A stretch of 64,000 nt of DNA. Source: Pristiophorus japonicus. Lineage: Eukaryota. The stretch covers positions 85,684,001-85,748,000 of the forward strand of contig NC_091997.1 of NCBI RefSeq assembly GCF_044704955.1. Direction: 5' to 3'. Below the pieces are notes generated by a model. That model searched no databases, was not told where the DNA came from, and worked only from the letters and a program-made list of their open reading frames with translations. Every line of letters begins with the position of its first letter. Positions within the stretch are counted from its first letter, which is position 1. Of the stretch, positions 4,830 through 63,845 are shown one piece after another. The position numbers and the translations under genes are program-made.

Positions 4830-5830
4830 ATAGAGATGGAGATAGACAGTGAGACGGGGATCGAATAACAGACAGAGAGCGAGAAACAGAGACAGAGAGA
4901 GANNNNNNNNNNNNNNNNNNNNNNNNNNNNNNNNNNNNNNNNNNNNNNNNNNNNNNNNNNNNNNNNNNNNNNNNNNNNNNNNNNNNNNNNNNNNNNNNNN
5001 NNNNNNNNNNNNNNNNNNNNNNNNNNNNNNNNNNNNNNNNNNNNNNNNNNNNNNNNNNNNNNNNNNNNNNNNNNNNNNNNNNNNNNNNNNGAGAGANNNN
5101 NNNNNNNNNNNNNNNNNNNNNNNNNNNNNNNNNNNNNNNNNNNNNNNNNNNNNNNNNNNNNNNNNNNNNNNNNNNNNNNNNNNNNNNNNNNNNNNNNNNN
5201 NNNNNNNNNNNNNNNNNNNNNNNNNNNNNNNNNNNNNNNNNNNNNNNNNNNNNNNNNNNNNNNNNNNNNNNNNNNNNNNNNNNNNNNNNNNNNNNNNNNN
5301 NNNNNNNNNNNNNNNNNNNNNNNNNNNNNNNNNNNNNNNNNNNNNNNNNNNNNNNNNNNNNNNNNNNNNNNNNNNNNNNNNNNNNNNNNNNNNNNNNNCA
5401 TAGAGAGAGACAGGGAGAGACGGTGATAGGCAGAGAGAGAGACAGAAAGAGAGAGACGGAGACAGATAGAAACAGCGAGAAAGAGAGAGAGAGACAGGCA
5501 GAGAGAGACAGAGACACAGAGAGACTCAGAGCGAGAGAGAGAAGGAGACAGGTAGAGAGAGACAGAGAGAGAGACAGGGAGAGAGACCGTGCGAGAGAGA
5601 GACAGATGGAGAGAAAAAGAAAGAAACAGAGTGAAAGAGAATTGGTGAGACAATCCGAGAGTCAGAGAGTGACAGACAGAGAGTGAGAGACAGAGAGTGA
5701 CAGACAGAGTGACAGACAGAGAGTGACAGTCAGAGAGTGACAGTCAGAGAGTGACAGACAGAGAGTGACAGACAGAGTGACAGACAGAGAGTGACAGTCA
5801 GAGAGTGACAGTCAGAGAGTGACAGACAGA
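4830..5830. repeat. GA/GACA microsatellite with N runs (4903-5090, 5097-5398)
   Basis: Direct inspection; GAGTGACAGACA units at the 3' side. Confidence 0.95.
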
Positions 5831-27000: not shown

Positions 27001-28235
27001 ATTCTCTCCTGTCCCTAGTAAAAAACTGTGTACTGCATGGGAGCTGGGCCAGCATCCCCGTTGAAATGCAAGAGCCAATCAAGCCATTCCAGTGGCGAAA
27101 GGACGAGCTGTCCATTCAGGCAGACTGGCTGTTGTGGGGTAACCGCGTAGTGCTACCAAAAAAGGGCAGGGAGACGTTCATCTCAGATCTCCACAGCACA
27201 CATCTGGGTATAGTAATGATGAAAGCGATAGCCAGATCCCACATGTGGTGGCCCGGTATCGACTCTGACTTAGAGTCCTGTGTACGGCAATGCAGCGTGT
27301 GTGCTCAGTTGAGCAACGCACCCAGAGAGGCACCACTAAGTTTGTGGTCCTGGCCCTCCAGACCATGGTCGAGGATCCATGTCAACTATGCGGGCCCGTT
27401 TCTCAGTAAAATGTTCCTGGTGGTGGTGGATGCTTTTTCAAAATGGATTGAATGTGAAATAATGTCGAGAAGCACCGCCACCGCCACCATTGAAAGCCTG
27501 AGGGCCATGTTTGCCACCCACGGCCTGCCTGACATATTGGTCAGTAACAACGGGCCATGTTTCACCAGTGCCAAATTTAAAGAATTCATGAACCGCAATG
27601 GGATCAAACATGTCACCCTGTTTAAACCAGCCTGCAGTGGGCAGGCAGTGCGGGCAGTACAAACCATCAAACAGAGCCTTAAACGAGTCACAGAAGACTC
27701 ACTCCAAACCCGCCTGTCCCGAGCAGTGCTCAGCTACTGCACGAGACCCCACTCGTTCACAGGGGTGCCCCCGATTGAGCTACTCATGAAAAGGACACTT
27801 AAAACCAGACTCTCGCTGGTTCAGCTCAACCTGCATGATCAGGTAGAGAGCAGACGGCAGCAACAAATATTAAACGATGGTCGCGCCACTGTGTCACGGG
27901 AAATTGATCTGAATGACCCTCTGTATGAGCGAAACTATGGACATGGTCCCAAGTGGATCGCGGGCACGGTGATAGCTAAAGAAGGGACTAGGGTGTTTGT
28001 AGTCAAACTAGACAATGGACAAATTTTCAGAAAGCACCTGGACCAAACGAGGCTGCGGTTCACAGGCTGCCCTGAACAACCCACAGCAGACACCACCTTT
28101 TTCGAGCCCACAACACACACCCACTGTCTATAAGCCGGCCCCGAAGGCCTGTTCCTCACTCTGGAGTGTCTGATTAAAGACTGAGGTCACTTTAACCTCC
28201 CTGTGTGAAGCCTCATCTGTGTTAGGAACACAATA
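24008..28235 (+). mobile_element. Gypsy LTR retrotransposon 2, unit 1 copy (gag-pol with stops; PPT and U3 of 3' LTR deleted)
   Basis: 5' LTR about 24008-24182, PBS TGGTGACGAG, TSD AAAGG (24003-24007, 28236-28240); gag 24215.., LDTGA, FQDD, RNase H and integrase ORFs 26039..26953 and 26943..28133. Confidence 0.95.
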
Positions 28236-28388: not shown

Positions 28389-28443
28389 ATGGCGCTTGGT
28401 GCTCTGTTTGTGGGTCTTTTCCTTCTGTTCCAACATGTTGTAG
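28389..28443 (+). CDS. Receptor copy B exon 1, signal peptide (MALGALFVGLFLLFQHVVG)
   Basis: AAATGG Kozak context, hydrophobic core, G|gtaagg phase-1 donor matching exon 2. Confidence 0.8.
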
Positions 28444-29586
28444 GTAAGGATCCATACTTTCAACTAATCCTCAACATGTTTATCTGGAAATATCAGTTTC
28501 TATCTGTACCTGAACGCGGAAATATAAGGATTGAAGGATATCGATTGCCATCAGTGCTGCTTTCACGCGGATGTTTAATGTACTCATATGACAGTTGTTG
28601 CTGAGGCATTTTAACACGGTTTAATCATGGGTGGTCAGTTTAAAATTGGCACTAAGAGAGTGAGGAGACAGATTAGGAGAACATTTTTTACACAGAGGTT
28701 TGTTTTGCCACAGGCAGTGGTTGACGCAGAGACATTTTCATCTTTTGAAGGAAAACTGGAAAACATTTGAAGCAGAGGAAGATTTGGGGCTGTGGAGAGA
28801 GCGAGGCAATGGGTTTGCTCTGGCAAAGAGCCAGCACTGGCACGATGGGCCCAATTGCCTCCTTCTGTGCTGCAAACGTCTTTGGTTCAACTCCTGTCTT
28901 AAAACAGTGCAGGGATGAAATACAAGAACACTGCTGATCCTATCCCAATTTCCCTTACTGCAGAACCATATCTCACTCTAAGAATGAAATAGTGGAAGAT
29001 TTAGAAGAGTTAGAAGGATTTGCTGATGGGCTTTAATGGAGAGAGGGGGTGGGAAGTCCGTGCAGAGCATAAATGCGGCATGGAGCAGTTGGGCCGAATG
29101 GCCTGTTTCTGTGCCGAACATTCCATGTAATTCTGTGTAAGATTTTGTGCTCAGACTCGATCATTGGGAGCTCTGAAGTAACAATTATATTTGATGACTC
29201 AGCCGAGCCTCACACCATTAAAGGGTGGAGACCACACTGGGCGGGGCCCACGACACCACTCGGACCAGGGCTCGAAATCAACACCACTGGCAAAATGGAG
29301 CAGCTCAGAGCTTTCTGTACATTACAGACCGTCCATTCCGCGATTGTTCTGTAAGGAAAGGGGAACCGACACTGTGATTGGAGGGGGTGGGAGGGTTCCC
29401 AATCGAGACTGTCTATCCAGACTGTGTAAGGGGTGGGGGATGGTGACTCTATCCAGACTGTGTAATGGAGCATTTCTAACCTGACTCTGTGAAATTTTAG
29501 GAGTGGGGTGGGTAGAAACAGATTCCGTGTAATATGAGCAGTCTGCAGGCAGACTCTGTTCCTGAAATGATAATTGACGTCTCCCC

Positions 29587-30839
29587 GATCGGTCCAAATC
29601 AGCATGGATTTATGAAAGGGAAATCATGCTTGACAAATCTTCTAGAATTTTTTGAGGATGTAACTAGTAGAGTGGACAAGGGAGAACCAGTGGATGTGGT
29701 GTATTTGGACTTTCAAAAGGCTTTTGACAAGGTCCCACACAAGAGATTAGTGTGCAAAATTAAGGCACATGGGATTGGGGTAATGTATTAACGTGGTAGA
29801 GAACTGGTTGGCAGCCAGGATCAAAGAGTGGGAATAAACGGGTACTTTTCAGAATGGCAGGCAATGACTAGTGAGGTACCGCAAGGTTCAGTGCTGGGAC
29901 CCCAGCTATTTACAATATATATTAATGATTTGGACGAAGGAATTGAATGTAATATCTCCAAGTTTGCAGATGACACAGTGTGAGCTGCGAGGAGGATGCT
30001 AAGAGGCTGCAGGGTGACTTGGACAGGTTAGGTGAGTGGGCAAATGCATGGCAGATGCAGTATACCGTGGATAAGTGTGAGGTTATGCACTTTGGTGGCA
30101 AAAACAGGAAGGCAGATTATTATCTAAATGGTGACAGATTAGTAAAAGGGGAGGTGCAACGAGACCTGAGTGTCATGGTACATCAGTCAATGAAAGTAGG
30201 CATGCAGGTTCAGCAGACAGTAAAGAAAGCAAATGGCATGTTGGCCTTCATAGCGAGAGGATTTGAGTATAGGAGCAGGGAGGTCTTGCTGCAGTTGTAC
30301 AGGGCCTTAGTGAGACCACACCTTGAGTATTATGTGCAGTTTTGGTCTCCTAATCTGAGGAAGGACATTCTTGCTATTGAGGGAGTGCAGCGAAGGTTCA
30401 CCAGACTGATTCCCGGGATAGCAGGACTGGCATATGAAGAAAGACTGGATCGACTAGGCTTATATTCACTGGAATTTAGAAGAATGAGAGGGGATCTCAT
30501 GGAAGCATATAAAATTCTGACGGGATTGGACAGGTTAAATGCAGGAAGAATGTTCCCGATGTTGGGGAAGTCCAGAACCAGGGGTCACAGTCTAAGGATT
30601 AGGGGTAAGCCATCTAGGACTGAGATGAGGAGAATCTTTTTCACCCAGAGAATTGTGAATGTATGGAATTCTCTACCACAGAAAGTTGTTGAGTCCAGTT
30701 CGTTGGTTATATTCAAAAGGGAGTTAGATGTGGCCATTGCGGCTAAAGGGATCAGGACGTATAGAGAGAAGGCAGGAGTGGGGTACTGAGGTTGAATGAC
30801 CTACTCCTGCACTTATTTTCTATGTTTCTGTATTTCTAT
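29587..30839 (+). mobile_element. 5'-truncated CR1 in intron 1 of copy B
   Basis: RT remnants 29534..29791 and 29980..30789, TTCTATGT tail; absent at about 57600-57620 in unit 2. Confidence 0.93.
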
Positions 30840-31209
30840 CCTCAGTCTAAACATGGCTGATGTCTGAGTTACAACCGAGTCTGACGGAGATGTGGTTTGG
30901 TGTTTGTTCGAGCTCTGGTGCAATAATGATCTATAGTATAGACACATCTGGGTCAGTGAGTGGAGAGTTTCTAGGTGCAGTCTGTCAGGGCCATTACAGG
31001 GGGGGATTGCGTGTATCAGATGCTCAAGTTGTAAACACAAATCCCTATCAGCCGCTCCATGATACCCAACCAATCAGAGCTCTGCTAACTTCTCCATCGC
31101 AGCTTATCATCTTAACCAGCAGGAAATGAGCTTCTGAACACAATGCAAGCAGAAATTATCGTTCTGACAATCTAGATGTGCTGATCAGAAATCTGTTCAT
31201 TACAAGAAA

Positions 31210-31525
31210 AAAAGAAAGTCTTGCATTTCTATAGCACCTTCTACAACCTCACAATGTCCCAAAGCTATTTAAAGCCAATGAAGTACTTCTGAAGTGCAAT
31301 CTCTGTTGATATGTAGAAAATGCGACAGCCCATTTTCACACAGCTAGGTCCCACAAACAGTAAAGTCTCATGTAAAAAAAACACACCTCTGACAGTATAG
31401 CACTCCCTCAGCACTGCACTGGGTGGTCGGCCTAGATTTTGTGCTCAAGTCTCTGGAGTGGGACTTGAACCCACAACCTTCTGACATCAGAAGCGACAGT
31501 GCTACCCACTGAACCACAGTTGACA
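31210..31525 (-). mobile_element. tRNA-derived SINE (internally deleted Deu-type)
   Basis: Minus-strand B-box-like GGTTCAAGTCCC near 31460-31471; 3' tail shared with the other SINE copies. Confidence 0.7.
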
Positions 31526-31869
31526 TCATGACAACAAGAACTGGAACTCATAGAGAGCGCTTAAAGTGGGGCAGGGCCTTGTGGTGTTTTGCAAATGTGG
31601 AAGTGCGGGGAAGGACGTGAGCTCGAGGTAGGAGAAGAGTGAGTGGAAGTGGCAAAAGGCTCGGTTGGAGAGGTAAGTTTTAAAGAACCTTTTGCAGATG
31701 CCAAAGATGTGCCAAGGTGGAGGGTGAGGGGTTAAGGGAGAGAATAGCAGAGTGTGGGGCATAAAGGCTGAGGGCTGAGCAAGTGGTGAAGGTTAAGGTT
31801 TCTTAAATCAATGCAGTGGGCCACAGAGGAGGCCAAAGTCAGATGAGGCCATGGAAGGATTGGTATTTA

Positions 31870-33410
31870 TTTTTTTAAACCTTGGATGTGGTCGTCACTG
31901 GAAATGTCAGCATTTAGTCTCTAGTTTTCCTTGAGAAGGTGGTAGTGACCCTTCCTCTTGAACCGTTAAGTCCGTGTGGTGAACACTTTCCACAATGCTG
32001 GTAGCGAGGGAGTTTCAGGATTTTCATCCAGCGACGATGAAGGAACAGCATTATACTTACAAGTCAGGATGGTGTGTCACTTGGAGAACTTGTAGGTGAT
32101 CATGCTCCCAAGCGTCTGCTGCCCTCGTTCTTCTATGTGGTAGAAGTCGTGGGTTTAGGAGGTGCTGTCGAAGAAGTCTTGGCAAGTTACTGCAGAGCAT
32201 CTTGTAGATGGTACACACTGCAGCCATGTTGCGCCGGTGGTGGAGGGAGTGAATGCTGAAGGTGGTGGATGGGGTGCCAAAATGTGATCCTGTTTATCCT
32301 GGATGGTGTGGAGTTTCTTGAGTGTTGTCGCAGCTGCACTCACCCAGGCAAGTGGAGAGTGTTGTAGGGCGCTTTCAAGGCAAAGGCACCTGCTGAATAT
32401 ATGTATGTATGTGTAAAATTGTAGCCAGATATAAAATGGCTGCCCGGGATTCCGCAAAGCCCGAGGGGAATTCAGCTAACCAGTTTGACTAACTTTCTGG
32501 GTAGCTGATGACACTGCATTTCCTTGTACAGGAACACTGGAAAGGGAGAGCTCAGCAGATGTCCCGAATCAACAAACCTCAGACAAGATGTCCTAGCAGA
32601 ATATTGAACAAAGGGATTCCTGTAACTGTGTTAAGATAAGGAGGTTAGGCACAGAACCCAAGGACAATAAAGATAAGGAGGTCTGAAGAATATCACGAGG
32701 GCATGAGTAAGTTCCAGCTAAACATGAGATGATCATGCAGGCCCCTGGTGTCTGGGGGACCAATTCTATTGGCCCAGAGGAATCGATTTGTAATCTATAA
32801 TCCTTATGATTGGATTGTGTCCAGCCGACATAGGCTGCGTAATTGTAATGAACTGGTATAAAACATATAAATACTGATGAATTTCTTTGTTCAGCAGTGA
32901 GTAGTGCCTGGAGTAACCCAGAGGTTTTCTCCCCGCCGACGTAATAAAAACCGTTTTGATGATGGAACCGACTCAGAGTGACGAGTGATTCTTCCAGGAT
33001 TTCATTCGCGCTAACAGAGAGTATTCCATCACACTCCTGACTTGTGCCTTGTAGGTGATGGAGAGAGTTTGGGGAGTCAGGAGGTGAGACACTCACCGCA
33101 GAATACCCAGCCTCTGACCACAGTATTTATGTAGCTGGTCCAGTTTTATTTTTGACCGATGATGACCCCTGACCATCCCTCCCTCAGATGTTGATGGTGG
33201 AGGATTTGATGATGTAATGCCGTTGAATGTCAGGAAATGGTTAGACCCTTTCTTGTTGGAGATTGTCATTGCCTGGGACTTGTTGTGAATGGAGCTGAAC
33301 ACTGTGCAATCATCAGCGAACATTCACACTTCTGACCTTATGATGGAGGGAGGGTCATTGATGAAGCAGTTGAAGATGGTTGGGCCCAGGACATTGCCTT
33401 GAGGAAGCGT
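31870..33410 (-). mobile_element. Degraded LINE 3' fragment, same family as 36990-39990, split by a solo LTR
   Basis: MFADDCTVF RT motif (33093..33323); reverse-complement similarity to 39110-39990. Confidence 0.8.
32360..33016 (+). mobile_element. Solo LTR, 657 bp
   Basis: TGTT...AACA termini, perfect TSD GAGAG (32355-32359, 33017-33021), TATAAAA 32857-32863, AATAAA 32943-32948; host LINE rejoins across it. Confidence 0.85.
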
Positions 33411-33419
33411 CCTAGGAGG

Positions 33420-34120
33420 GTAAAGAGCAGTTTTTAACTCAATGCCTTAGGGGGAGGTCAGTGAGGACAGGAGGGGTTGGTGAGTAGGATGCCATACGGG
33501 ACAGGATGAAACCGATGAAGAAAGGATTGTAGATATCCATGTTCATGGAGATGAAATTGTGGAGGAGAGTTCTAGTGGCACTGAGAATGAGATAGGAATG
33601 GAAGCAGCAATCTTTGGGAGGTGAGTCATGACATCTGGTGGAGGGCTAGATGTGGGTTTGAGGTACAGCTCAGGGTCAAATAGGTATAGTGGAGCTGAAG
33701 GGAATGGCTTTGCTTTTTCTGGGGAAAGGCCTGGTCTGTCTCGAACCTGATGCCAGCTAAGAAATCGGACAGTACAGCACTGAGGACATTGATGGAGAGG
33801 TGAAGTGAGGTATCGACTTGGCTACGTATGGAAGCTGACTCCTTGATAATGTTCCTGAGAAATAGCATGTATATGTGGAATATAGGAGAGGACCAAGGAT
33901 GGAGCCTTGGGTGGACATGGGGCGACCATTGCACACGGGAGGAGAACAATTCCTGAGGATGTGAGAAAGATAGGAGTGGATGTATTTAACAGCAGTGCCA
34001 CAAAGGTGGGCCATTGGAGAACCATTGGAGAAGGTTCACTGTGTCAAGGGCCTTTAAGCTGTTGAGGAAGATAAGGAAGGATAATACACTATGGTTGTAA
34101 ACACACAGGATATTGTTGTT
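33420..34120 (-). mobile_element. Highly degraded L2-like RT fragment
   Basis: QGSILGPLL (33757..34014) and LKALDTVN (33986..34249) remnants of RT motifs. Confidence 0.55.
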
Positions 34121-34133
34121 AATTTTGATAAGG

Positions 34134-35116
34134 ATGCGCTTATTTGTACTGCAAAAATGGCCAACATGTTCCACCTTTTGTTTCTGATTGGTCCCCTTGG
34201 AGAATAAGCCACACCCTGAAGTTTCACAGGAATGTGTAACTGGAACCACCTATCCCAAGGTCTCACTGACTTTGCAAATTGTAACTCGATCCACTTTGAC
34301 TTCCTGAAGTGACAGAGGTCAGAGCTCCAAAGAAGATAGCAAGGGCCAACCAAAGTACCTTGCCCCAGTCCAAGTACATCCCTCCCCCAGCCGAAGGGTC
34401 TTACCCTAGTCCAAGTGCATGCCTCCCCCAGCCGAAGTGCCTTACCCTAGTCCAAGTGCATGCCTCCCCCAGCCAAAGTGCCTTGTCCCAGCGCAAGTAC
34501 ATCCACTCCCTTCCGCCCTATCCTCCCACACCATAGATGGGGCAGGGATTGTGTACGGATTGGTAACAGGTTTATTGGCTGTGAAGTGAATAGTGACAGT
34601 GTGGTGACTTCTGGATATCATTCACTCCAACGATGTCCCTTGTAGGGGGTTGGAAGAACATGATCTGTCTTCCTTCCAATCATGTCTCTCCCCACAACTG
34701 CTCTCTCTCCCCACAGTCTCTCTCTCTCTCTACCCCCAATCTCTCTCTCTCTCTCTCTTCCCTCAATTTCTCTCTCCTCCCAGTCTCGCTCACTTTCCCG
34801 CTCCCCCCAGCCCCTCTCACCACCACCGCCCCAGTCTCTTTCTCCCCCTCCCCCCAGTCTCACTCTGCCTCTCGCTATCGCCCCCCGCCAGCTGCTCTCG
34901 GGCCCACGCTGGTCGGAGGGAGGGTGGGCGGGTTCGGTGCCTCAGGTCCTGCGTCACGGCACCACATGGATGGAATGATTTAGGCGGGGAGGGGGCAGAG
35001 CTTGACAGGGGCGGGGCTTGTCACCTGTCAGTCAAAAAAGTGCAGTATAGTCATGGGGGGCGGGGCTTGACAGACGCCTGTCTGTCAAAAAAAGTACAGT
35101 ACAAATAGTTACATCG
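34134..35116 (-). mobile_element. Second, shorter copy of the subterminal-inverted-repeat element
   Basis: Reverse-complement homology to both arms of 9813-12471; flanking direct repeat TTTTGATAAGG (34123-34133, 35117-35127). Confidence 0.7.
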
Positions 35117-35389
35117 TTTTGATAAGGCTGGTCTTGCTGATCAGTGTCATTCAAACCATACACATTGTCAACAAGCGTTAATGAAACAATTTGGAAGCTG
35201 TAAATTGACATCAAGTGGATACGCTAATTTACAGACTGTGGCAAAGAATTCTATGAAAGGAACAATAAACTGGCCTATTACCAAGCCATTGTGCAGAGCA
35301 TAATTTCCTATGAGAGGCTTTGTTTCACGTTGACTGTTTAATGAGCTTTCCTGTCTCTATCTCTATCCCATTCTGCCCTTTCCCCGCAG

Positions 35390-35782
35390 GATCCACTTAT
35401 CTCTTCTTCCTAAGACCAGGAGATGTCACCACTCTGCAATGCAACGTGCCCACCGGTGCTGGGAATAAAGTAACCTTGTGCAACTCCAGTGATCCCGGGT
35501 CAGAAATGGGTAAAATAAAATGTAAGAACGAAAAGCCATGTTATGAAAATATCGGTCCTCAGGGGAAAAAAGGACACAGTGAGCCAGAGTGTACAAAATG
35601 CAAATTAAATGACCATGAAACGGAGTCTCTGACATTCGCTGTGAAGACGATTAACTCGATGGTGTTTACCTGCATGGCTCAAGATTCCACAGAAGGAGGG
35701 GCATTGGAGTGTCCGTCCTGGCTCACACTGTCACAGCCGGGATGTGAAAACCACGACTTGTTCTTTGTGATAACCCAGGATG
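35390..35782 (+). CDS. Receptor copy B exon 2, atypical Cys-rich Ig-like domain D1
   Basis: Strong pyrimidine tract and cgcag acceptor, G|gtaggt donor, 393 nt, phase 1-1; PGDVTTLQC and VFTC resemble Ig B and F strands, 77 codons apart. Confidence 0.85.
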
Positions 35783-36166
35783 GTAGGTGCACTGGGGCAA
35801 TATCGCGGGAGGGATCGGGGCAGGTATTGGGGGAGGGATTGTTGTGGGAACATTAGGGGTAATTTAAGGTAAGGTATTAGGCGAGATATTAGAGGAGATA
35901 TTAGAGAGACGTTGGGGAGATATTAGAAGAGGTTTTCGGGCAGATAGCTGTCATTGCCTTCATTAAGATGAAATTACCTTGTGTGTAGATAAAGAGTAAT
36001 AGTGAGAAGTAGCTGGCACGGGTTTCAAACTGTCCAGGAGGTAAGAGACATGGTAGGTGGGGGAATGCGGTGGATGCAGTGTACATGGACATTAGGAAAT
36101 CCTTCGACTAAGTATCACATTGGAGATTATTATATTAACAAATATTCTTTTCAATGTTGTTTATAG

Positions 36167-36643
36167 ATTCAACTGATATATTTTTGATTAAAGAAAATTT
36201 GTCGCTGACAGTGTCAGAGGGAGAGAATGTGACTTTACCCTGCCAGTTTGAGAATATAAAACCACTCCCCTTCACTCTGTTTTGGTTCAGATCTGGAAAC
36301 GTCAACAAGTGTCTGCACTCTGTTCACACTGAGGATCATGCTGCACATTCTAACACACGTTGCTGTGTGGATAGAGAGTCATCACAAAGAATCTCTACCC
36401 AAAGCTCACACAATCCTTTGGTTAGCCGCCAGTCTCACAACCTTACTATTCACTCAGCGGGCCTGGTGGACACTGGGAGGTATCTCTGTGCTGTACACAG
36501 TCAGGATTCAGGGAAACCTGTCTGGAAGATTGCAGCAAACATCTCCCTTGTGACAGAGCCCAGTGCAGAAACTTCAGACACTCCCACCTCAACATCTGGA
36601 ATATCCTCAGAGAGCAGCAGCATAACTTGTACAAATACTCAAA
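36167..36643 (+). CDS. Receptor copy B exon 3, V-set Ig domain D2 plus S/T stalk
   Basis: EGENVTLPC, LFWFR, LTIHSAGLVDTGRYLC; ttatag acceptor, A|gtaagt donor, 477 nt, phase 1-1. Confidence 0.93.
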
Positions 36644-36847
36644 GTAAGTGATGCAATCTAAAACATAATGTGAACCATTTAATATCAATAATTCAAGGTG
36701 TGAGATTCCAGGTCCATTGTCCAGTTTGTACCCTTTAGAAGTTACTTTGATTTCCTTCCTTTGCCATTGCACTATTCTAGATTGTAACCAGAAAAGTATG
36801 TTCCTCAGCCCAGGTAACCAGTGTAATGAGCAGCAGGAAATCTTCAG

Positions 36848-36913
36848 ACACTCCCACCTCAACATCTGGAATATCCTCAGTGACCGGAAGCATTACTCCT
36901 ACAAATATACAAA
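36848..36913 (+). CDS. Possible optional 66-nt stalk exon (TPTSTSGISSVTGSITPTNIQ)
   Basis: Duplicate of the 3' end of exon 3 including the gtaagt donor; in frame from a weak ttcag acceptor. Confidence 0.35.
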
Positions 36914-36989
36914 GTAAGTGATACAATCTAGAGCATGATGTGAACCATTTTATATCAATAATTCAATATAAATAATATAAGTAATTCTT

Positions 36990-38070
36990 TCACACAATGT
37001 CCCAGACTCCTCCATCACCTTCCCAGGGTATGTCCGGTCCCACCGGCAGGACAGACCCACCAGAGGTGGCGGCACAGTGGTATACAGTTGGGAGATAGTG
37101 GTCCTGGGAGTCATAGAAACATAGAAACATAGAAAATAGGTGCAGGAGTAGGCCATTCGGCCCTTCAAGCCTGCACCGCCATTCAATGAGTTCATGGCTG
37201 AACATGAAACTTCAGTACCCCATTCCTGCTTTCTCGCCATACCCCTTGATCCCCCGAGTAGTAAGGACTACATCTAACTCCTTTTTGAATATATTTAGTG
37301 AATTGGCCTCAACAACTTTCTGTGGTAGAGAATTCCACGGGTTCACCACTCTCTGGGTGAAGAAGTTTCTCCTCATCTCGGTCCTAAATGGCTTACCCCT
37401 TATCCTTAGACTGTGACCCTTGGTTCTGGACTTCCCCAACATTGGGAACATTCTTCCTGCATCTAACCTGTCTAAACCCATCAGAATTTTAAACGTTTCT
37501 ATGAGATCCCCTCTCATTCTTCTGAACTCCTCAACATTGACTCCCTAACATCGTAAAGTCTCATGGCATCAGGTCAAACATGGGCAAGGAAACCTCCTGC
37601 TGATTACCACCAACCGCCCTCCCTCAGTTGATAAATCAGTACTCCTCCATGTTGAACAGCACTTGGAAGAAGCACTGAGTGGTTCGGTAGCACCACTACT
37701 GACCGACCTAGCCTCGTCCTGAAGGACATCCTTGCCAGACTGGGCCTATGGCAGATGGTGAAAGAACCAACATGAGGGAAAAACATACATGACCACATCC
37801 TCACCAATCTACCTGTCACAGATGCATCTGTCCATGACAGTATTGGAAAGAGTGACCACTGCACAGTCCTTGTGGAGACAAAGTCCCATCTTCACACTAA
37901 GGACACCCCTGCATCATGTTGTGTGGGTCTACCACTGTACTAAATGGGATCTCAGTGTCAGTATTCTATGGACAAATACGTAAGCTGCTCCAAGATTAAT
38001 GTGCTCATCTAAACTGCGATCTCTGAAAACCAGGGAGGTCCTGAGGGAGGGAGGGAAGGGGTCAGTAGGA

Positions 38071-38107
<37 letters not shown>

Positions 38108-39990
38108 AGGCCTGTGCAGCAGAGCCTAGTCTCCAATCATCTTGGGTCCCCTTGCCATTGGACCAAGACCCAGCTCTGTCAAGTCTGTGTGGTGGCTGGT
38201 GTGCAACGGCCACCCCATATTAAAAGGATTTATGGTGCATAGGCATCTTCCACCCTTTAAAATGAAGTTCGAGATCTGGCCCGCATTAGTCTCATCAGTC
38301 ACCTTAGAACTCATTTTAGTGTGGAAGCAAGTCATGCTCAACTCCGGGGCACTGCCTAAGAAGAGAGAAGAAGAAATGGGATAGATTCAGAAAAGACCTT
38401 GCAGATAAAACTGGGCATTCATGAGGGCCATCATCAGCAGCAGAATTGTATTCCACAACAATCTGTGACCTCATGTCCCGGCATATCCCTCACTCTACCA
38501 TTACAATTAAGCCAGGGGACCAACCCTGGTTCAATGAAGCGTGTAAAAGAGCATGCCAGGAGCAGCACCAAGCACACCTAAAAATGAGGTGCCAACCTGC
38601 TGTAGCTACACTACATGCATGCTAAACAGCACATGCAGCATGCTATAGGCAGAGTGAAGCGATTCCACAACCAACGGATCAGATCAAAGCTCTGCAGTCC
38701 TGCCACATGCAGTCATGAATGGTGGTGGACAATTAAACAACTAAGGGGAAGAGGCTCCATGAACATCCCCATCCTCCATGATGGCAAAGCCAGCACGTGA
38801 GTGCAAAAGACAAGCAGAAGTGTTTGCAACCATCTTCAGCCAGAAGTGGTGTGCGGATGATTCATCTCGGCCTCCTCCGGAGGTCCCCAATATCACAGAA
38901 AACAGTCTTCAGCCAATTTGATTCACTCCATGTCATATCAAGAAATAGCTGACGCACTGGATACGGCAAAGTCTATGGGCCCCGACAGTATCCCGACTGC
39001 AGTGCTGAAGACTTTTGTCCCACAACTTACCCTGCCTCTATCCAAGCTGTTCCATTAAAGCTACATCACTGGCGTCTACCCAACAAAGTGGAGAATTGCC
39101 CAGGTATGTATGTTCATGATTGCAGTCTTCTGTTCCATTTGCAACCCCTCAGATAATAAAGCAGTCCATGTCTGTATGCAGCAAGACCTGGACAACATTC
39201 AGACTTTGACTGATAAGTGGCAAGTAACATTTGCGCAACACAAGTGCCAGGGAATGACCATCTCCAACAAGAGAGAGTCTAACCACCTTCACTTGATATT
39301 CAACGGCATTACCTTCACTGAATCCCCACCATCAACTTCCTAGGGGTCAGCATTGACCAGAAACTTAACTGGACCAGTCACATAATTGCTGTGGCTAGAA
39401 GAGCAGGTCAGAGGCTGGGTATTCTGCGGCGAGTGTCTCACCTCCTGACTCCCCAAAGTCTTTCCACCATCTACAAGGCACAAGTCAGGAGTGTGATGGA
39501 ATGATGAGTTGAGCTCCAACAATTTGATGCTCGACACCATCAGGATTAAGGAGCCTGCTTGATTTGCATTCCAACCACATGTTAAACGTTCACTCCCTCC
39601 ACAACCAGCGTACCGTGGCTGCAGTGTGTACCATCCACGATGCACTGCAGCAACTCACCAAGGCTTCTTCGGCAGCACCTCCCAAACCCGTGACCTCCAC
39701 CATGTAGAAGATCAAGGGCAGTAGAATGGATTGTGACTTGGAGAGGAACATCCTCATCTCCAAGTTCCCCTCAGTCACACACCATCCTGACTTGTAAATA
39801 TATCACTGATCTTTTATCGTCGCTGGTCAAAATCTTGGAACTCCCTCTCTAACAGCACTGTGGGAGTACCTTCATCACGTGGACTGCAGCGGTTCAAGAA
39901 GGTGGCTCACCACCACCTTCTCACGGGCAATAAGAGATGGGCAATAAATTTTGGCCTTGTCAATGATGCCCACATCCCATGACTGAATAC
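36990..39990 (+). mobile_element. Degraded LINE (endonuclease-RT remnants) with nested insertions and (TG)n at 38072-38105
   Basis: QQDLDNIQ...WQVTFAQHKCQ (39110..39343); SDH-like AGTGACCAC at 37851. Confidence 0.75.
37113..37529 (-). mobile_element. Short 3' fragment of the young CR1 family
   Basis: ORF 37212..37517 matches the CR1 ORF2 C-terminus; same tail as 142-4137. Confidence 0.95.
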
Positions 39991-40197
39991 AACAGAAATT
40001 AAGCGAGAGATTCAAGAGCAATTGTCCACTTTGTACCCATTAGACGTTGGTTCGATTTTCTTCCTTCGCAATTGCACTTTTCCAGATTGTAACAGAAAAG
40101 TATCTTCCTCGGCCCAGGTAACCAGTGTGATCAGCTGTACATATAAGACGGCATTGCACAAACTGAACTTAATGTTGCTTCTCCTATGCATTTCCAG

Positions 40198-40317
40198 ACC
40201 CTGCCATCACTGTGAACGTAGCCATAGTGTGTCTGATTGTACTCATTTGCATTGTTGGGATAGTTTGCATTATTGGGGTAGTTTGCCGAAGGAAACGACA
40301 ATCTGTCAAAGGTAAAG
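40198..40317 (+). CDS. Receptor copy B transmembrane exon
   Basis: tttccag acceptor; phase-1 frame gives PAITVNVAIVCLIVLICIVGIVCIIGVVC-RRKRQSVKGK; donor aag|gtaagc (alternative in-phase donor after 40311). Confidence 0.9.
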
Positions 40318-40427
40318 GTAAGCAAGAGCGTTAAAATGTTTGATCTAAATCTATAAAATTGTAAGAGCAGATTCCTTACATAGATTCTTACATTTATCTT
40401 TCCCATCTTACGGCATGTGTTGTGAAG

Positions 40428-40449
40428 GATCCTCAGCACCAGGACCCAG
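40428..40449 (+). CDS. Receptor copy B 22-nt micro-exon (GSSAPGP)
   Basis: gaag acceptor, cag|gtaggg donor; supplies the phase 1 to 2 shift needed to read the next exon without a stop. Confidence 0.65.
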
Positions 40450-40546
40450 GTAGGGATGGGATTTGATCAGTATTTCGGCAGACTTTCTGTATAATTTTGC
40501 TCATTTAATGGAACATTTACAGGTTACTTTTCTTTGCTAACTGTAG

Positions 40547-40581
40547 GGCCGGTGATGTGCAGCTGACACAAGTGGCTGAAT
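40547..40581 (+). CDS. Receptor copy B 35-nt exon (RAGDVQLTQVAE)
   Basis: ctgtag acceptor, T|gtaagt donor; only the phase 2-1 frame is open. Confidence 0.7.
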
Positions 40582-40675
40582 GTAAGTGACTAGAATTGCT
40601 GGCCAGCTCTTCCGATCCTGGCCCTTTGAGAGTTGAAACTAAAAGCACACATGGTGTTCCCGCCCTTCTGTCCAG

Positions 40676-40862
40676 GTTTCCCGTACTCTGTGGTTCCCAG
40701 GAAGGATCAGAGCGATGACAACGAGCCTGTTGCGTACTCGGTGACAAGAGTTCCAACGCCGTCGAGCCAGCCAAGGCCTGGTGAAGGAATGGAGAGCACT
40801 GGCCCAAACATTGACTCTACAGAGCATGTGTACTGTTTGATCGAGGAGTCAATGGTCAAAGG
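40676..40862 (+). CDS. Receptor copy B cytoplasmic exon with FPYSVV, VAYSVT, HVYCLI
   Basis: tgtccag acceptor, GG|gtaagc donor, 187 nt, phase 1-2; lies within ORF 40633..40866. Confidence 0.85.
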
Positions 40863-42224
40863 GTAAGCAGAGTGACAGCTGTCACCCCTCGGCTACGGTC
40901 AACACTGACCACAACTTTGTTTCAGGATGGAGGGTTAGAAGATCGTTAATGTAATGAAGGTGAGGGGAGCCCATGCTGGCAAATGGGTTACTTTTCCACT
41001 TTGGCCACACAGTATCACTTGGAGCACTCCAGATTAGGCACAGCGTAAAACTCCCTCTGGACTGTCCCAACAATGTTCCTCAACTCCAAGGTCAGGAGAG
41101 AGGTCAGACATCTTCACTTCTCACACCTCATGTCCTGTTTGAGTGGAAGGGCCAATTTAGAGGTAGTTTTGTACTGTGGCTCACATGAGCTGCAAACTGG
41201 ATCGAGATGACCAAATTAATTTCATCAAGGACCATGAGAGAAAATGTGAGAGAAAGAAAGAGACAGAGAAAGACAGAGACAGAGACAGACAGTGATAGGT
41301 TCAGACAGAGACTGCGACAGAGACAGACAGACAGTGATAGATTCAGATAGAGACTGACCTGATATTGGAATAAAGGAGCACTATCAGAAAAGCATCACAG
41401 TGCCCTTATGAAGTTATCTTTTTTTTTTAAACTCTCTCAGGACAATATTTTGGCATATGTGACCATAGTGATCAATTTCGTCCAAATATTTTACTGAATG
41501 ATTGGCAGTTTTAGGCAAGGAATTGGATTGAGGCTGAACACTCTTTGCAGAGAGGACAGCTTACATAGCAGACTCAGAGAGATAAAGAGAGATATGGAGA
41601 CAGTAACAGAGACACAGAGAGACAGAGAGAGACAGAGAGAGACAGACAGAGAGCAACACAAAGAGAGAAAGAGAAAGAGAGACAGTGTTTTGGATCGATA
41701 ATAATAGACCCAGGTTCGGGATCTGGGTGAATGTTAAATAATAGATAAGACAAATGAAGTAAAGAATTAAATACTGTTTACTGAGGGAAAAGAAATATTA
41801 ATAAAAAAGTTTACGAAGAAAAGAGAAGTATGATAAGATGCAACAACGCTGACGGCCTTCGGCCTGTCGGGAACTCTGCAACGACGGCTGGTCTGGAGCC
41901 TTGGGGGTCCCGGCACCGCTCGCGAATCGCGGTCCAAGGTGAAGTTCGAAGAGCTAAGGGACAGTGCCGCTCCTTTATACTATTAAACAAAACATGGGTG
42001 CATGTGGCTTATGGCCAACTCCTAATCTGTAACACCCCAGCTGCTTGTCCACAAAGCATGAGATCTCGAGGCGCCGACAGTCTCATAATAAGCTGGTGTG
42101 CATCTCAAGATCGCTTCCCTCTCTCTCTCTCTATAGCAACAACAATCCACGAAGCATGGAGCAGAAACACACTGTAAATGACTAAATATCATAATTAACT
42201 TTATGTGATTAACCCTCTACAATC

Positions 42225-43360
42225 GAGACGGAGATAGACAGTGAGACGGGGATCGAATAACAGACAGAGAGCGAGAAACAGAGACAGAGAGAGANNNNNN
42301 NNNNNNNNNNNNNNNNNNNNNNNNNNNNNNNNNNNNNNNNNNNNNNNNNNNNNNNNNNNNNNNNNNNNNNNNNNNNNNNNNNNNNNNNNNNNNNNNNNNN
42401 NNNNNNNNNNNNNNNNNNNNNNNNNNNNNNNNNNNNNNNNNNNNNNNNNNNNNNNNNNNNNNNNNNNNNNNNNNNNNNNNNNNNNNNNNNNNNNNNNNNN
42501 NNNNNNNNNNNNNNNNNNNNNNNNNNNNNNNNNNNNNNNNNNNNNNGACAGAGACAGGCAGAGAGACAGCGAGAGAGAGAGAGAGAGAGAGAGAGTCAGC
42601 GAGACAGGAAGAGAGAGACAGAGACAGGCAGCGAGNNNNNNNNNNNNNNNNNNNNNNNNNNNNNNNNNNNNNNNNNNNNNNNNNNNNNNNNNNNNNNNNN
42701 NNNNNNNNNNNNNNNNNNNNNNNNNNNNNNNNNNNNNNNNNNNNNNNNNNNNNNNNNNNNNNNNNNNNNNNNNNNNNNNNNNNNNNNNNNNNNNNNNNNN
42801 NNNNNNNNNNNNNNNNNNNNNNNNNNNNNNNNNNNNNNNNNNNNNNNNNGCATAGAGAGAGACAGGGAGAGACGGTGATAGGCAGAGAGAGAGAGACAGA
42901 AAGAGAGAGACGGAGACAGATAGAAACAGCGAGAAAGAGAGAGAGACAGGCAAAGAGAGACAGAGACACAGAGAGACTCAGAGCGAGAGAGAGAAAGAGG
43001 CAGGCAGAGCGAGACAGAGAGAGAGACAGGGAGAGAGACCGAGAGAGAGAGATAGATGGAGAGAAAGAGAAAGAAACAGAGAGAAAGAGAATCGGTGAGA
43101 CAATCCGAGAGTCAGAGAGTGACAGACAGAGTAACAGACAGAGAGTGACAGACAGAGAATGACAGACAGAGTGACAGACAGAGAGTGACAGACAGAGAGT
43201 GACAGACAGAGTGACAGACAGAGAGTGACAGACAGAGAGTGACAGTCAGAGAGTGACAGACAGAGAGTGACAGACAGAGAGTGACAGACAGAGTGACAGT
43301 CAGAGAGTGACAGTCAGAGAGTGACAGACAGAGAGTGACAGACAGAGAGTGACAGACAGA
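42225..43360. repeat. GA/GACA microsatellite with N runs (42295-42546, 42636-42849)
   Basis: Paralog of 4830-5830. Confidence 0.95.
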
Positions 43361-43518
43361 ATCAGGGAAAATGAATGAGGGAATTTCAGGCTGGGTTAGA
43401 CTGAAATCCAGGCCAGTGGGGAGAAAGTGACTGAATGTAGTTTCCACTTACAGCTGTTTAATATTGTTTGAATCATATGTTACTCATTTTTCACACATTT
43501 AATTTTCTGTTTTCCCAG

Positions 43519-43553
43519 TGATGACGGCAAAACTGAAATCCAGGCAGTAAAAT
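43519..43553 (+). CDS. Receptor copy B 35-nt exon (GDDGKTEIQAVK)
   Basis: Long pyrimidine tract and cccag acceptor, T|gtaagt donor, phase 2-1. Confidence 0.8.
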
Positions 43554-43626
43554 GTAAGTCGTGGCAATCTTTCAGTATCTTTCATTATCTGTCCCCACAT
43601 GGAAGTGAAACCCTCTTAATTTCTAG

Positions 43627-43892
43627 GCAGTGACCGCACGGACCATGTACCGCAGGTTGAAACCTCTTTAGCCATTGAACTCAAACCAGACGGCCAATCG
43701 CAGCCCAAAGAGGACAGTAAGGAGGATCCCGTTGCTCTGTCTAATGAGCAGACTTATTCTTTGATAGGTTGCCCGGGGACAGGGAGCCCAGGAGACACGG
43801 AGACAAGGTCTTGGCTGGAGGAAGATGATCCACAACCTGGCCCGTTAGAGATGGAAGAAAATCCTATTTATGCTAAAATAGAGGAAGCCTGA
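43627..43892 (+). CDS. Receptor copy B terminal coding exon (QTYSLI, ENPIYAKIEEA*)
   Basis: ttctag acceptor; 266 nt open to TGA at 43890-43892. The nine exons sum to 1590 nt (529 aa plus stop). Confidence 0.82.
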
Positions 43893-63443: not shown

Positions 63444-63845
63444 GATCCACTTATCTCTTCTTCCGAGGACCAGGAGATGTCACCACTCTGCAATGCAACG
63501 TGCCCACCGGTGCTGGGAATAATGTAACCTTGTGCAGCTCCAGTGATGCCGGGTCAGGAATGGGTGAAATAAAATGTCAGCACCCAAAGAACGAGAAGCC
63601 ATGTGATGAAAATATCGGTCCTCAGGGAAGAAAAGGATACAGTGAGCCAGAGTGTACAAAATGCAAATTACATGACGACCAAACAGAGTCTCTGACATTC
63701 GCTGTGAAGACGATTAACTCGATGGTGTTTACCTTCATGGCTCAGGATTCCACAGAAGGAGGGGCATTGGAGTGTCCGTCCTGGCTCACACTGTCACAGT
63801 CGGGATGTGAAAACCACGACTTGTTCTTTGTGATAACCCAGGATG
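63444..63845 (+). CDS. Receptor copy C exon 2, Cys-rich Ig-like D1 variant
   Basis: Same splice sites as copy B, 402 nt open frame, 15 replacements and a QHP insertion. Confidence 0.85.

What the first reader, a model, noticed from the sequence alone, without database searches (positions are those of the whole stretch)
35390..35782. Membrane-distal domain is an atypical nine-cysteine Ig-like fold lacking the core Trp
Seen: PGDVTTLQC and VFTC are 77 codons apart in a phase 1-1 exon, like Ig B and F strands, but the expected C-strand Trp position reads VTLC (13 residues after the first Cys) and six more cysteines occur, including a CTKC and a C-x10-C loop (CPSWLTLSQPGC) after the F strand. Inference: a disulfide-stapled ligand-binding domain with a long constrained CDR3-like loop, loosely recalling the extra-disulfide strategy of shark VNAR but germline-encoded.
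Basis: partly seen in the sequence, partly recalled or inferred. Interest (0 to 1): 0.8.

Follow-up and report, generated by a model that had tools for sequence, protein, structure and literature searches.

The report
Shark receptor's cysteine-rich Ig-like outer domain
This exon encodes the outermost, nine-cysteine domain of a cell-surface receptor family so far seen only in sharks; it is most likely a heavily modified antibody-type (Ig-like) domain, but its fold could not be predicted and remains unproven.

Summary
Window 35390-35782 (+) is a phase 1-1 exon with AG/GT borders. The exon is real: it equals residues 20-149 of public Pristiophorus japonicus "uncharacterized protein" isoforms. Transcript-like contigs splice it to the next exon, a V-set exon.

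Relatives turned up only in 11 shark species.

The Ig reading is partly supported:
- The window's own domain matches no Pfam family and no PDB sequence.
- 6 of 13 family members give sub-threshold Ig hits.
- The family profile's only PDB hit is a titin I-set domain, E 0.048.
- One orthologue has Trp at the canonical place.

Against it, AlphaFold2 failed twice, with pLDDT 36 and 29, and a profile comparison with the gene's own V domain found nothing.

The "CDR3-like loop" is not supported. The C-x10-C stretch is the most conserved part of the domain. Variation sits in a charged insertion of about 45 residues.

An earlier follow-up of this scan on a neighbouring copy called this domain unclassifiable. 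My verdict is a new variant of a known kind, of moderate interest.

The parts
28389..28443 (+). Signal-peptide exon (MALGALFVGLFLLFQHVV plus the first base of a Gly codon), phase 1 donor
   Evidence: Sequence read. It matches residues 1-19 of the public proteins P0001 and P0007.
35390..35782 (+). D1 exon, the finding: 393 nt, phase 1-1, 130 full codons, nine Cys; the N-terminal domain of the mature protein
35428..35481 (+). Residues 13-30, TTLQC...VTLC: proposed B strand (C17), BC loop and C strand (L29, C30)
   Evidence: Alignment of the Heptranchias orthologue to antibody VL residues 12-38 and to LRIG1 (E 0.3-0.9, not significant). C17 is invariant in 13 of 13 sequences.
35482..35619 (+). 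Residues 31-76: charged, indel-rich insertion carrying C44, C50, C67 and C70 (8 K/R and 8 D/E in 46 residues)
   Evidence: Highest column entropy (1.64 bits) and 13 of 42 columns with gaps. 10 of the 15 amino-acid differences between the two window copies (residues 31-76; 13 of 15 in residues 1-76), plus a 3-codon indel, fall here.
35623..35709 (+). Residues 78-106, ESLTFAVKTINSMVFTCMAQDSTEGGALE: proposed E strand, F strand (C94) and FG turn; this is the Ig-like signature
   Evidence: All Pfam Ig hits and the titin, LRIG1, MuSK and CEACAM5 alignments cover this stretch. S79, V84, S89, F92 and T93 are invariant.
35710..35745 (+). Residues 107-118, CPSWLTLSQPGC (C-x10-C): the most conserved segment. 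It is either the G strand or a disulfide-closed loop
   Evidence: Entropy 0.66 bits and no gaps; C107 and C118 are present in 13 of 13 sequences. Titin and MuSK alignments put C107 on a Cys of their G-strand region.
35746..35781 (+). Residues 119-130, ENHDLFFVITQD: conserved hydrophobic tail or linker before D2
   Evidence: E119 and L123 are invariant and V126 is conserved in at least 90% of sequences.
36167..36643 (+). D2 exon: V-set Ig domain with five invariant Cys, followed by a Ser/Thr stalk; phase 1-1
   Evidence: Pfam V-set E 2.7e-8 and Ig_3 1.5e-8. PDB hits are SIRP, TCR alpha and PD-1. Joints 35781>36166 and 36643>36809.
36809..36913 (+). Second stalk exon (QVTSVMSSRKSSDTPTSTSGISSVTGSITPTNIQ), phase 1-1
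   Evidence: The GT..AG joint 36643>36809 is seen in run X2. The exon is present in P0001 and P0007.
63444..63845 (+). D1 exon of the next tandem copy: 86% amino-acid identity, three extra codons, and C94 replaced by Phe (TGC>TTC), giving 8 Cys
   Evidence: Identical to the D1 of public protein P0012.

Best explanation
The exon encodes the membrane-distal domain (D1) of a type I receptor family found so far only in sharks. The order of parts is signal peptide, D1, V-set D2, Ser/Thr stalk, membrane span and Tyr-rich tail.

D1 is most likely a strongly diverged Ig-like beta sandwich of the I-set kind. My proposed layout, in D1 residue numbers, is:
- C17 is the B-strand Cys and C94 is the F-strand Cys.
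- The canonical C-strand Trp is replaced by Leu29, with an extra Cys at residue 30.
- A charged, indel-prone insertion of about 45 residues replaces the usual C'-D region and carries four extra Cys.
- The F strand is followed by a short FG turn and an invariant C-x10-C element.
- A conserved hydrophobic tail leads into D2.

Co-loss of cysteines across orthologues suggests two pairs: C30 with C70, and C50 with C67. C44 moves about, so it may be free or linked to another domain.

The variable N-terminal half and the insertion are the likely recognition surface. The conserved C-terminal third is probably scaffold or the interface with D2.

Shown: the exon, its splicing, its conservation and the pattern of variation. 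Inferred: the fold, the disulfide map and ligand binding.
For: Real, spliced N-terminal domain:
- establish the exon and its public protein matches.
- One search gives exon-only contig coverage. Bin 35181-35361 has depth 0 in all 3 runs. A GT..AG joint links D1 to D2 in X2 and X3.

Ig-like signature:
- Ig_2 matches 6 of 13 members (best E 0.015), ig 4 of 13 (best 0.0038, 17.9 bits against a cut-off of 21.8), I-set 3 of 13 (best 0.0056) and Ig_VEGFR-1-like 1 of 13.
- In one search the hits lie mostly on residues about 60-106; two are wider (residues 11-115 and 41-110), and the widest (Heptranchias) matches Ig_2 profile positions 15-77 of 79.
- No non-Ig family scores below E 0.045.
- The profile of 13 D1 sequences against 177,635 PDB sequences gives one hit at E<=10: titin I-set 3puc_A, E 0.048, aligned over the E-F loop, F strand, FG turn and start of G.
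- Single-sequence PDB searches: Rhincodon 8 of 8 hits are Ig-domain proteins (best 0.013); Heptranchias 7 of 8, including five light chains that align its C17 to Cys23 and W29 to Trp35; Heterodontus 2 of 3.
- Language-model neighbours with a family are all or nearly all Ig clusters at scores 0.88-0.91: 9 of 10 and 10 of 10.
- The phase 1-1 exon is usual for Ig-domain exons (my own knowledge).

Cysteine pattern:
- 10 of 17 rows have 9 Cys.
- C17, C107 and C118 are invariant.
- Heptranchias loses C30 (to W) and C70 (to H) together.
- Hemiscyllium loses C50 (to Y) and C67 (to H) together.

Where variation sits:
- Column entropy is 1.64 bits in the insertion against 0.66 in C-x10-C.
- 13 of 15 replacements between the two window copies lie in residues 1-76 (Fisher p 0.024).
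- pN/pS is 1.16 in residues 1-76 and 0.29 in residues 77-130.
Against: - The window's own D1 has no Pfam family at E<=10 and no PDB sequence hit at E<=10.
- Every Ig hit in relatives is below Pfam's curated cut-off, and 7 of 13 members have none.
- The members are homologous, so their hits are not independent. Nearly all rest on one motif block, (D/N)-S-x-V-F-T-C-x-x-Q-(N/D)-S-x-G-G.
- AlphaFold2 gave no confident model, either alone (pLDDT 35.8) or with 17 sequences (29.0). That is unusual for an ordinary Ig domain.
- hhalign of the D1 profile against the family's own V-set D2 profile gave probability 0.2% in every setting.
- The B-to-F Cys spacing of 77 is longer than usual.
- The proposed F-strand Cys is Phe in 4 of the 17 rows. 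P0012, which is not one of those rows, has the same D1 as the second window copy.
- Mustelus P0021 loses C70 but keeps C30, so the pairing by co-loss is not clean.
- If C107 lies on an extended G strand it cannot bond C118, so the proposed layout and the C-x10-C loop reading conflict. This is unresolved.
- The top language-model neighbours (0.92-0.94) are unnamed mollusc clusters, not Ig.
Confidence: 0.6

Rival explanations
1. D1 is a new disulfide-rich fold with no Ig sandwich. On this view the Ig-like hits come from a short motif that resembles the F strand by chance or by convergence.
For: - The window copy has no significant match to any Pfam family or PDB sequence.
- All relatives' hits are sub-threshold.
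- AlphaFold2 failed twice.
- hhalign against the V-set D2 gave 0.2%.
- The best language-model neighbours are unnamed clusters.
- The supposed core Cys94 is dispensable in some paralogues.
Against: - Both halves align in the correct register to Ig domains. B strand, CDR1 and C strand align to light chains and LRIG1; E, F and G align to titin, LRIG1, MuSK and CEACAM5.
- Ig families are the only ones that recur, and the only ones below E 0.03.
- One orthologue has Trp 12 residues after the first Cys.
- No other cysteine-rich family (Ly6/uPAR, TNFR, sushi, SRCR and the like) appeared at E<=10.
Confidence: 0.25
2. One reading: an Ig-like domain in which C107-x10-C118 is a long disulfide-closed FG (CDR3-like) loop that binds ligand, with LFFVI as the G strand.
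For: - A C-x10-C spacing that never changes in 13 of 13 sequences fits a closed loop.
- An extended G strand could not bring the two Cys together (geometry, my inference).
- A Heterodontus alignment to a Fab heavy chain (8ecz_H) lays this stretch along its long CDR H3; a bovine Fab heavy chain (5ijv_H) is a second hit there. Both are weak, at E 0.16-0.19.
- LFFVI is strongly hydrophobic and conserved.
Against: - The segment is the least variable of the domain (0.66 bits), with P108, W110, T112, L113 and G117 conserved in at least 90% of sequences. Paralogues differ there at 1 of 12 residues. That is the opposite of a specificity loop.
- I-set alignments put its first half on the G strand.
Confidence: 0.2
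3. The exon is a non-functional or unused relic, either a pseudo-exon or skipped in mature transcripts.
For: The runs are not on record as RNA, and many of the contigs come from near-identical paralogues rather than this exact copy. One contig carries a 9-letter insertion after 35523.
Against: - The frame is intact, with proper splice sites.
- All eight P. japonicus isoforms returned contain D1. This is biased, because they were found with D1 as the query.
- Exon-only coverage and a GT..AG joint to D2 appear in 2 of 3 runs.
- The domain is conserved across 11 shark species.
- The exon is about 95% identical between the two copies (20 differences in 390 aligned bases), against 82-85% for the flanking intron.
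Confidence: 0.02

Closest known systems
I-set immunoglobulin domains (titin Ig domains, LRIG1 Ig, MuSK Ig1), Pfam PF07679 / PF13895 / PF00047
   Same: - The E-F-G signature L-T-F-x-V ... (D/N)-S-x-V-F-T-C-x-x-Q-(N/D)-S-x-G-G followed by ...C..(L/I)-T-L aligns to these domains.
- A Cys sits in a V-T-T-L-Q-C B-strand-like context.
- The exon is phase 1-1.
- Titin and MuSK also have a Cys at the place aligned to C107.
   Different: - No match reaches a curated threshold.
- This copy has no C-strand Trp.
- The B-F spacing is 77 residues, because of a Cys-bearing charged insertion of about 45 residues.
- It has nine Cys instead of two.
- A further conserved tail of 12-16 residues follows.
- AlphaFold2 does not recognise it.
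Shark IgNAR variable domain (VNAR)
   Same: Both are shark Ig-type domains stabilised by non-canonical cysteines. My knowledge of VNAR is recalled; it was not tested here.
   Different: - D1 is a germline exon spliced to the next domain, not a rearranged V.
- D1 gave no V-set Pfam match, whereas D2 does.
- Its extra cysteines are conserved framework or insertion residues, not variable CDR residues.
V-set receptor domains with extra disulfides or an interdomain disulfide (for example the Siglec/CD22 N-terminal domain, VISTA); features recalled, apart from Pfam Ig_CD22 appearing weakly for D2
   Same: It is the N-terminal domain of an immune-type receptor and has an odd number of Cys. D1 mostly has 9 or 7, and D2 has 5 invariant, which would allow one D1-D2 bridge.
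   Different: No sequence relationship was detected. The interdomain bridge is only a parity argument, and it fails for the 8-Cys paralogues.

Membership tests
Immunoglobulin superfamily domain (Pfam clan Ig, CL0011) | Significant profile match (Pfam gathering threshold) | tested here: not met
   The window D1 has 0 families at E<=10. The best relative scores 17.9 bits against 21.8 for PF00047. Ig_2 matches 6 of 13 members, all below 27 bits.
Immunoglobulin superfamily domain (Pfam clan Ig, CL0011) | B-strand Cys and F-strand Cys in the motifs x-L-x-C and (D/N)-x-x-x-(Y/F)-x-C | tested here: met
   TTLQC (C17) and NSMVFTC (C94). They align to Cys23 of light chains and to the YTC/YSC of titin and LRIG1. 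The spacing of 77 is unusually long. C94 is Phe in 4 of 17 rows.
Immunoglobulin superfamily domain (Pfam clan Ig, CL0011) | Core Trp on strand C, about 11-14 residues after the first Cys | tested here: not met
   The window reads K-V-T-L-C at residues 26-30. Only the two Heptranchias rows (P0002, P0003) of the 17 rows read W there, as VTWW.
Immunoglobulin superfamily domain (Pfam clan Ig, CL0011) | Two-sheet beta sandwich with Greek-key topology | tested here: inconclusive
AlphaFold2 gave pLDDT 35.8 (single sequence) and 29.0 (17 sequences).
Immunoglobulin superfamily domain (Pfam clan Ig, CL0011) | Domain encoded by one phase 1-1 exon | tested here: met
   This is not specific to Ig domains.
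V-set domain / VNAR-like variable domain | V-set profile match, and for VNAR assembly by rearrangement with variable CDR3 cysteines | tested here: not met
   D1 and its relatives gave no V-set hit. hhalign against the family's own V-set D2 gave probability 0.2%. The exon is joined to D2 by GT..AG splicing. The post-F Cys pair is invariant.
Other cysteine-rich extracellular modules (Ly6/uPAR, TNFR, sushi, SRCR, EGF, Kazal) | Profile match to the family | tested here: not met
   None appears at E<=10 for any of the 13 members. Pfam families newer than the local copy were not tested.

The most novel reading that the evidence does not exclude
D1 founds a new structural class of vertebrate receptor domain. 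One form of this is a non-Ig disulfide-rich fold. The other is an Ig sandwich rebuilt around a cross-core disulfide in place of the invariant Trp, with a cystine-stapled insertion as a germline recognition module and an obligatory disulfide bridge to D2. On either form it arose in the shark lineage and is maintained as a tandemly expanding receptor family.
Probability: 0.2. Interest if true: 0.65.

Novelty: new variant of a known kind. Interest (0 to 1): 0.4.

Why it matters
Sharks are the oldest living lineage with antibody-based immunity, and their lineage-specific receptor families are little studied. This family is tandemly duplicated and is expressed as several predicted isoforms, including forms whose only ectodomain is D1. 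Its outer domain is matched by no curated Pfam model in the copy searched here.

If D1 is an Ig domain that swapped its core Trp for extra disulfides and grew a cystine-stapled insertion, it widens the known tolerance of the Ig fold. It could also be a compact, very stable binding scaffold, as VNAR turned out to be.

If it is not Ig, it is a new vertebrate extracellular fold.

Either way a D1-D2 structure and a disulfide map would settle the question, and the ligand is entirely open.

Tried and rejected
Steps that led nowhere:
- Structure prediction. AlphaFold2 on D1 alone gave pLDDT 35.8. On alignment A2, with D1 first and 16 relatives, it gave pLDDT 29.0.
There was no match at E<=0.001 and no TM-score above 0.38. 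Many rows are antibody chains, but on a model of this quality that is not evidence. The VIA-align libraries were not tried, because no residue reaches pLDDT 50.
- hhalign of the D1 profile against the family's D2 V-set profile, in four settings. Probability was about 0.2% throughout. The best local alignment put D1's F-strand block on D2's B strand. I reject that register because the residues after the Cys (x-x-Q-N/D-S-x-G-G) fit the I-set F-G pattern found by Pfam and the PDB searches, not a B-C pattern.
- Direct searches with the window's own D1 against Pfam and the PDB: nothing.

Readings considered and dropped:
- Ly6/uPAR, TNFR, sushi, Kazal, SRCR, PSI and Frizzled-CRD. No profile hit, and by eye the cysteine spacings do not fit. 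The comparison by eye rests on recalled patterns.
- The CD28 family. The passages read in PMC11599192 mention no two-domain or cysteine-rich members.

Literature: four literal searches (listings only) showed no paper on this family. These searches are narrow, and supplements were not consulted.

Disulfide parity: D1 is mostly odd and D2 has 5 invariant Cys, which suggests an interdomain bridge. I keep this only as speculation, because the 8-Cys paralogues and the predicted D2-skipping isoforms do not fit it.

Not tested:
- Whether some transcripts skip D1. The signal exon lies 7 kb upstream, outside the 5,401 letters laid.
- Whether batoids or chimaeras have the family. None appeared, but I cannot verify that their proteomes are in those libraries.

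Full report
**What is there.** Window 35390-35782 (+) is bounded by an AG acceptor (35388-89) and a GT donor (35783-84). It is 393 nt long, and both ends are in phase 1. Its 130 full codons (35392-35781) read STYLFFLRPGDVTTLQC...VFTC...CPSWLTLSQPGCENHDLFFVITQD.

Cysteines lie at residues 17, 30, 44, 50, 67, 70, 94, 107 and 118. So every spacing in the finding is correct: 77 between the 'B' and 'F' Cys, 13 to VTLC, CTKC, and C-x10-C. The only Trp is W110.

A phase-1 signal-peptide exon lies at 28389-28443. D1 is therefore the N-terminal domain of the mature protein. The next exon, 36167-36643, is a clear V-set Ig domain (Pfam V-set 2.7e-8, Ig_3 1.5e-8) followed by a Ser/Thr stalk. A second stalk exon lies at 36809-36913.

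**It is a real gene part.**
- phmmer of D1 against 1.84 billion representative proteins found 5 proteins and nothing else at E<=0.001.
- The best of these, P0001, is 100% identical over residues 20-149. It is a public 'uncharacterized protein isoform X5' of Pristiophorus japonicus.
- Three word-index searches, scored on D1 only, raised the total to 21 proteins from 11 shark species: Pristiophorus, Heptranchias, Mustelus, Heterodontus, Cetorhinus, Carcharodon, Rhincodon, Stegostoma, two Chiloscyllium and Hemiscyllium. All are unnamed except one automatic 'serine-rich adhesin'-like label.
- By my own knowledge of shark taxonomy these species cover both shark superorders. No ray, chimaera or bony vertebrate appeared.
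- Public isoforms of this very gene include signal-D1-D2-stalks without a membrane span (P0007) and signal-D1-stalk2-TM-tail without D2 (P0001, P0006). An isoform of the next copy has D1 as its only ectodomain (P0012).

**Expression.** One search for runs found three runs of one study, of unrecorded kind. I laid their contigs on 35000-40400.
- Coverage is confined to exons. Bin 35181-35361 has depth 0 in all three runs, and 35905-36085 has depth 0 in two.
- There is a GT..AG joint 35781>36166 (equivalently 35782>36167) in X2 and X3, and a GT..AG joint 36643>36809 in X2.
- A contig of X3 starts its match at 35388 after 54 unmatched letters. That fits a splice from the signal exon.
- The material is therefore transcript-derived, and D1 is spliced to D2.
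- Caveat: several contigs carry the differences of near-identical paralogues, such as the 9-letter insertion after 35523. The family's D1 exon is shown to be expressed, but this exact copy is not proven to be. Contigs cannot show the absence of D1-skipping forms.

**Is it Ig-like?**

Direct tests on the window's own sequence are negative. There is no Pfam family at E<=10 and no PDB sequence at E<=10.

I built a D1-only alignment of 13 sequences (A3).
- Scanning each member against Pfam, Ig_2 matched 6 of 13 (best E 0.015), ig 4 of 13 (best 0.0038), I-set 3 of 13 (best 0.0056) and Ig_VEGFR-1-like 1 of 13.
- All of these are below the curated cut-offs, and 7 of 13 members have no Ig hit.
- The only other families were single hits at E 0.045-0.33.
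- The hits lie mostly on residues about 60-106; two are wider (residues 41-110 and, in Heptranchias, residues 11-115 against Ig_2 profile positions 15-77 of 79).

The A3 profile against all PDB sequences gave one hit at E<=10: the titin I-set domain 3puc_A, E 0.048. It aligns D1 87-111 to titin 69-93, which covers the E-F loop, F strand, FG turn and start of G.

Single-sequence PDB searches gave these results:
- Rhincodon: 8 hits, all Ig-domain proteins (titin 0.013, CEACAM5, MuSK, a nanobody, FGFR4, LRIG1, KIT, CEA).
- Heptranchias: 8 hits, 7 of them Ig (titin, LRIG1, five antibody light chains) and one trypanosome VSG, at E 0.27-0.94.
- Heterodontus: 3 hits, thioredoxin and two Fab heavy chains, at E 0.14-0.19.

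The light-chain alignment lays SRGPGDFTTLQCNVPAGAGNKVTWW on VL residues 12-38. That puts C17 on Cys23 and the first W on Trp35. So the N-terminal and C-terminal parts both align to Ig domains in the right order and register.

Language-model neighbours of two orthologues' D1 that carry a family are Ig clusters, 9 of 10 and 10 of 10, at scores 0.88-0.91. The top neighbours (0.92-0.94) are unnamed mollusc clusters, and the tool warns that such agreement is weak.

**Evidence against.**
- AlphaFold2 gave pLDDT 35.8 without an alignment and 29.0 with a 17-row alignment. An ordinary Ig domain usually does better (my experience, not a call).
- Foldseek with the poor model gave nothing at E<=0.001.
- hhalign of D1 against the family's own V-set D2 gave 0.2% probability in all settings.
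- The Ig hits are not independent of each other. They lean on one motif block.

I put the Ig-like reading at about 0.6 and a genuinely different fold at about 0.25.

**Cysteines across the family**.
- Of the 17 D1 rows, 10 have nine Cys, 3 have eight, 3 have seven and 1 has ten.
- C17, C107 and C118 never change.
- Heptranchias loses C30 (to W) and C70 (to H) together.
- Hemiscyllium loses C50 (to Y) and C67 (to H) together.
- C44 is shifted or replaced in Carcharodon and Stegostoma.
- C94 is Phe (TGC>TTC) in the second window copy and two other sawshark paralogues.
- Mustelus P0021 loses C70 alone.
- This suggests pairs C30-C70 and C50-C67 and a canonical C17-C94. It is inference from few sequences.
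- Cys-to-Trp is a one-base change, so the Heptranchias W is suggestive rather than proof.
- D2 has five invariant Cys. The odd counts in D1 and D2 would allow one interdomain bridge, but this is speculative.

**The 'CDR3-like loop'.** On A3, the C-x10-C segment has the lowest column entropy of all segments (0.66 bits, top-residue frequency 0.82, no gaps). The stretch 31-66 has the highest (1.64 bits, 13 of 42 columns with gaps).

Between the two copies in this window there are 15 amino-acid changes and a 3-codon indel.
- 13 of the changes lie in residues 1-76 and 2 in residues 77-130 (Fisher p 0.024).
- pN/pS is 1.16 in the first part and 0.29 in the second, on only 3 and 2 synonymous differences.
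- For the whole exon dN/dS is 0.82.

A specificity loop should vary, and this one does not. The I-set alignments place ALECPSWLTL on the G strand, with a Cys of titin and of MuSK at the place of C107. Yet an extended G strand could not bring C107 to C118. This cannot be decided here.

The likely recognition surface is the variable N-terminal half with its charged, cystine-bearing insertion.

**Comparison with what is known.** The closest known kind is the I-set or V-type Ig domain with extra disulfides. Membership of the Ig superfamily is not shown by any threshold-passing test. The Trp criterion is not met in this copy. The Cys pair, the F-strand motif and the exon phase criteria are met.

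VNAR is only an analogy. D1 is spliced, not rearranged, and its extra Cys are conserved.

Four literal paper searches (listings only) and passages of PMC11599192 showed no description of this family.

An earlier follow-up of this scan on a copy 18 kb beyond the window called the outer domain 'unclassifiable' and found the family only in sharks. My searches agree on the range and add the Ig-leaning evidence.

**Verdict.** This is a new variant of a known kind, inside an already predicted but uncharacterised shark gene family. Interest 0.4.

Noticed in passing
window 36167-36643: The V-set D2 has five cysteines that are invariant in all 15 family rows examined: LPC, NKC, the doublet RCC and YLC. 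That is three beyond the canonical pair. This gene's stalk adds another (ITC).
   Followed up: partly
window 28389-43892 (gene), proteins P0001, P0006, P0007, P0012: Public isoform predictions differ by whole ectodomain or membrane exons. There is a D2-skipping form with D1 as the only folded ectodomain, a form without the transmembrane exon, and for the next copy a signal-D1-TM form. The joints listed show only D1>D2 and D2>stalk2; 66 further joints were not shown.
   Followed up: partly
window 36809-36913 compared with 36560-36643: The second stalk exon looks like a duplicate of the 3' stalk part of the D2 exon: 71% identity over 28 residues by tblastn.
   Followed up: no
window 35089-35389 and 35783-35932 compared with the flanks of 63444-63845: Between the two tandem copies the D1 exon is about 95% identical in DNA, but the flanking intron is only 82-85% identical. 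Exon dS (0.06) is well below the intron divergence. This could reflect constraint, gene conversion of exons or alignment noise.
   Followed up: partly
window 36991-37533 and 38077-40067: Intronic repeats have extremely high contig word depth in the three transcript-like runs (up to about 1.5 million). They overlap a minus-strand ORF of a retroelement type (37212-37517, MRGDLIETFKIL...). Other retroelement ORFs lie at 26943-28133 (integrase-like) and 29980-30789.
   Followed up: no
window 4903-5398 and 42295-42849: Runs of N lie inside simple-repeat stretches.
   Followed up: no
protein P0002 (Heptranchias perlo, 683 aa): One public model contains the D1-D2-stalk unit twice in tandem. It is either a real four-domain receptor or a fusion of two neighbouring genes made by the gene predictor.
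   Followed up: no
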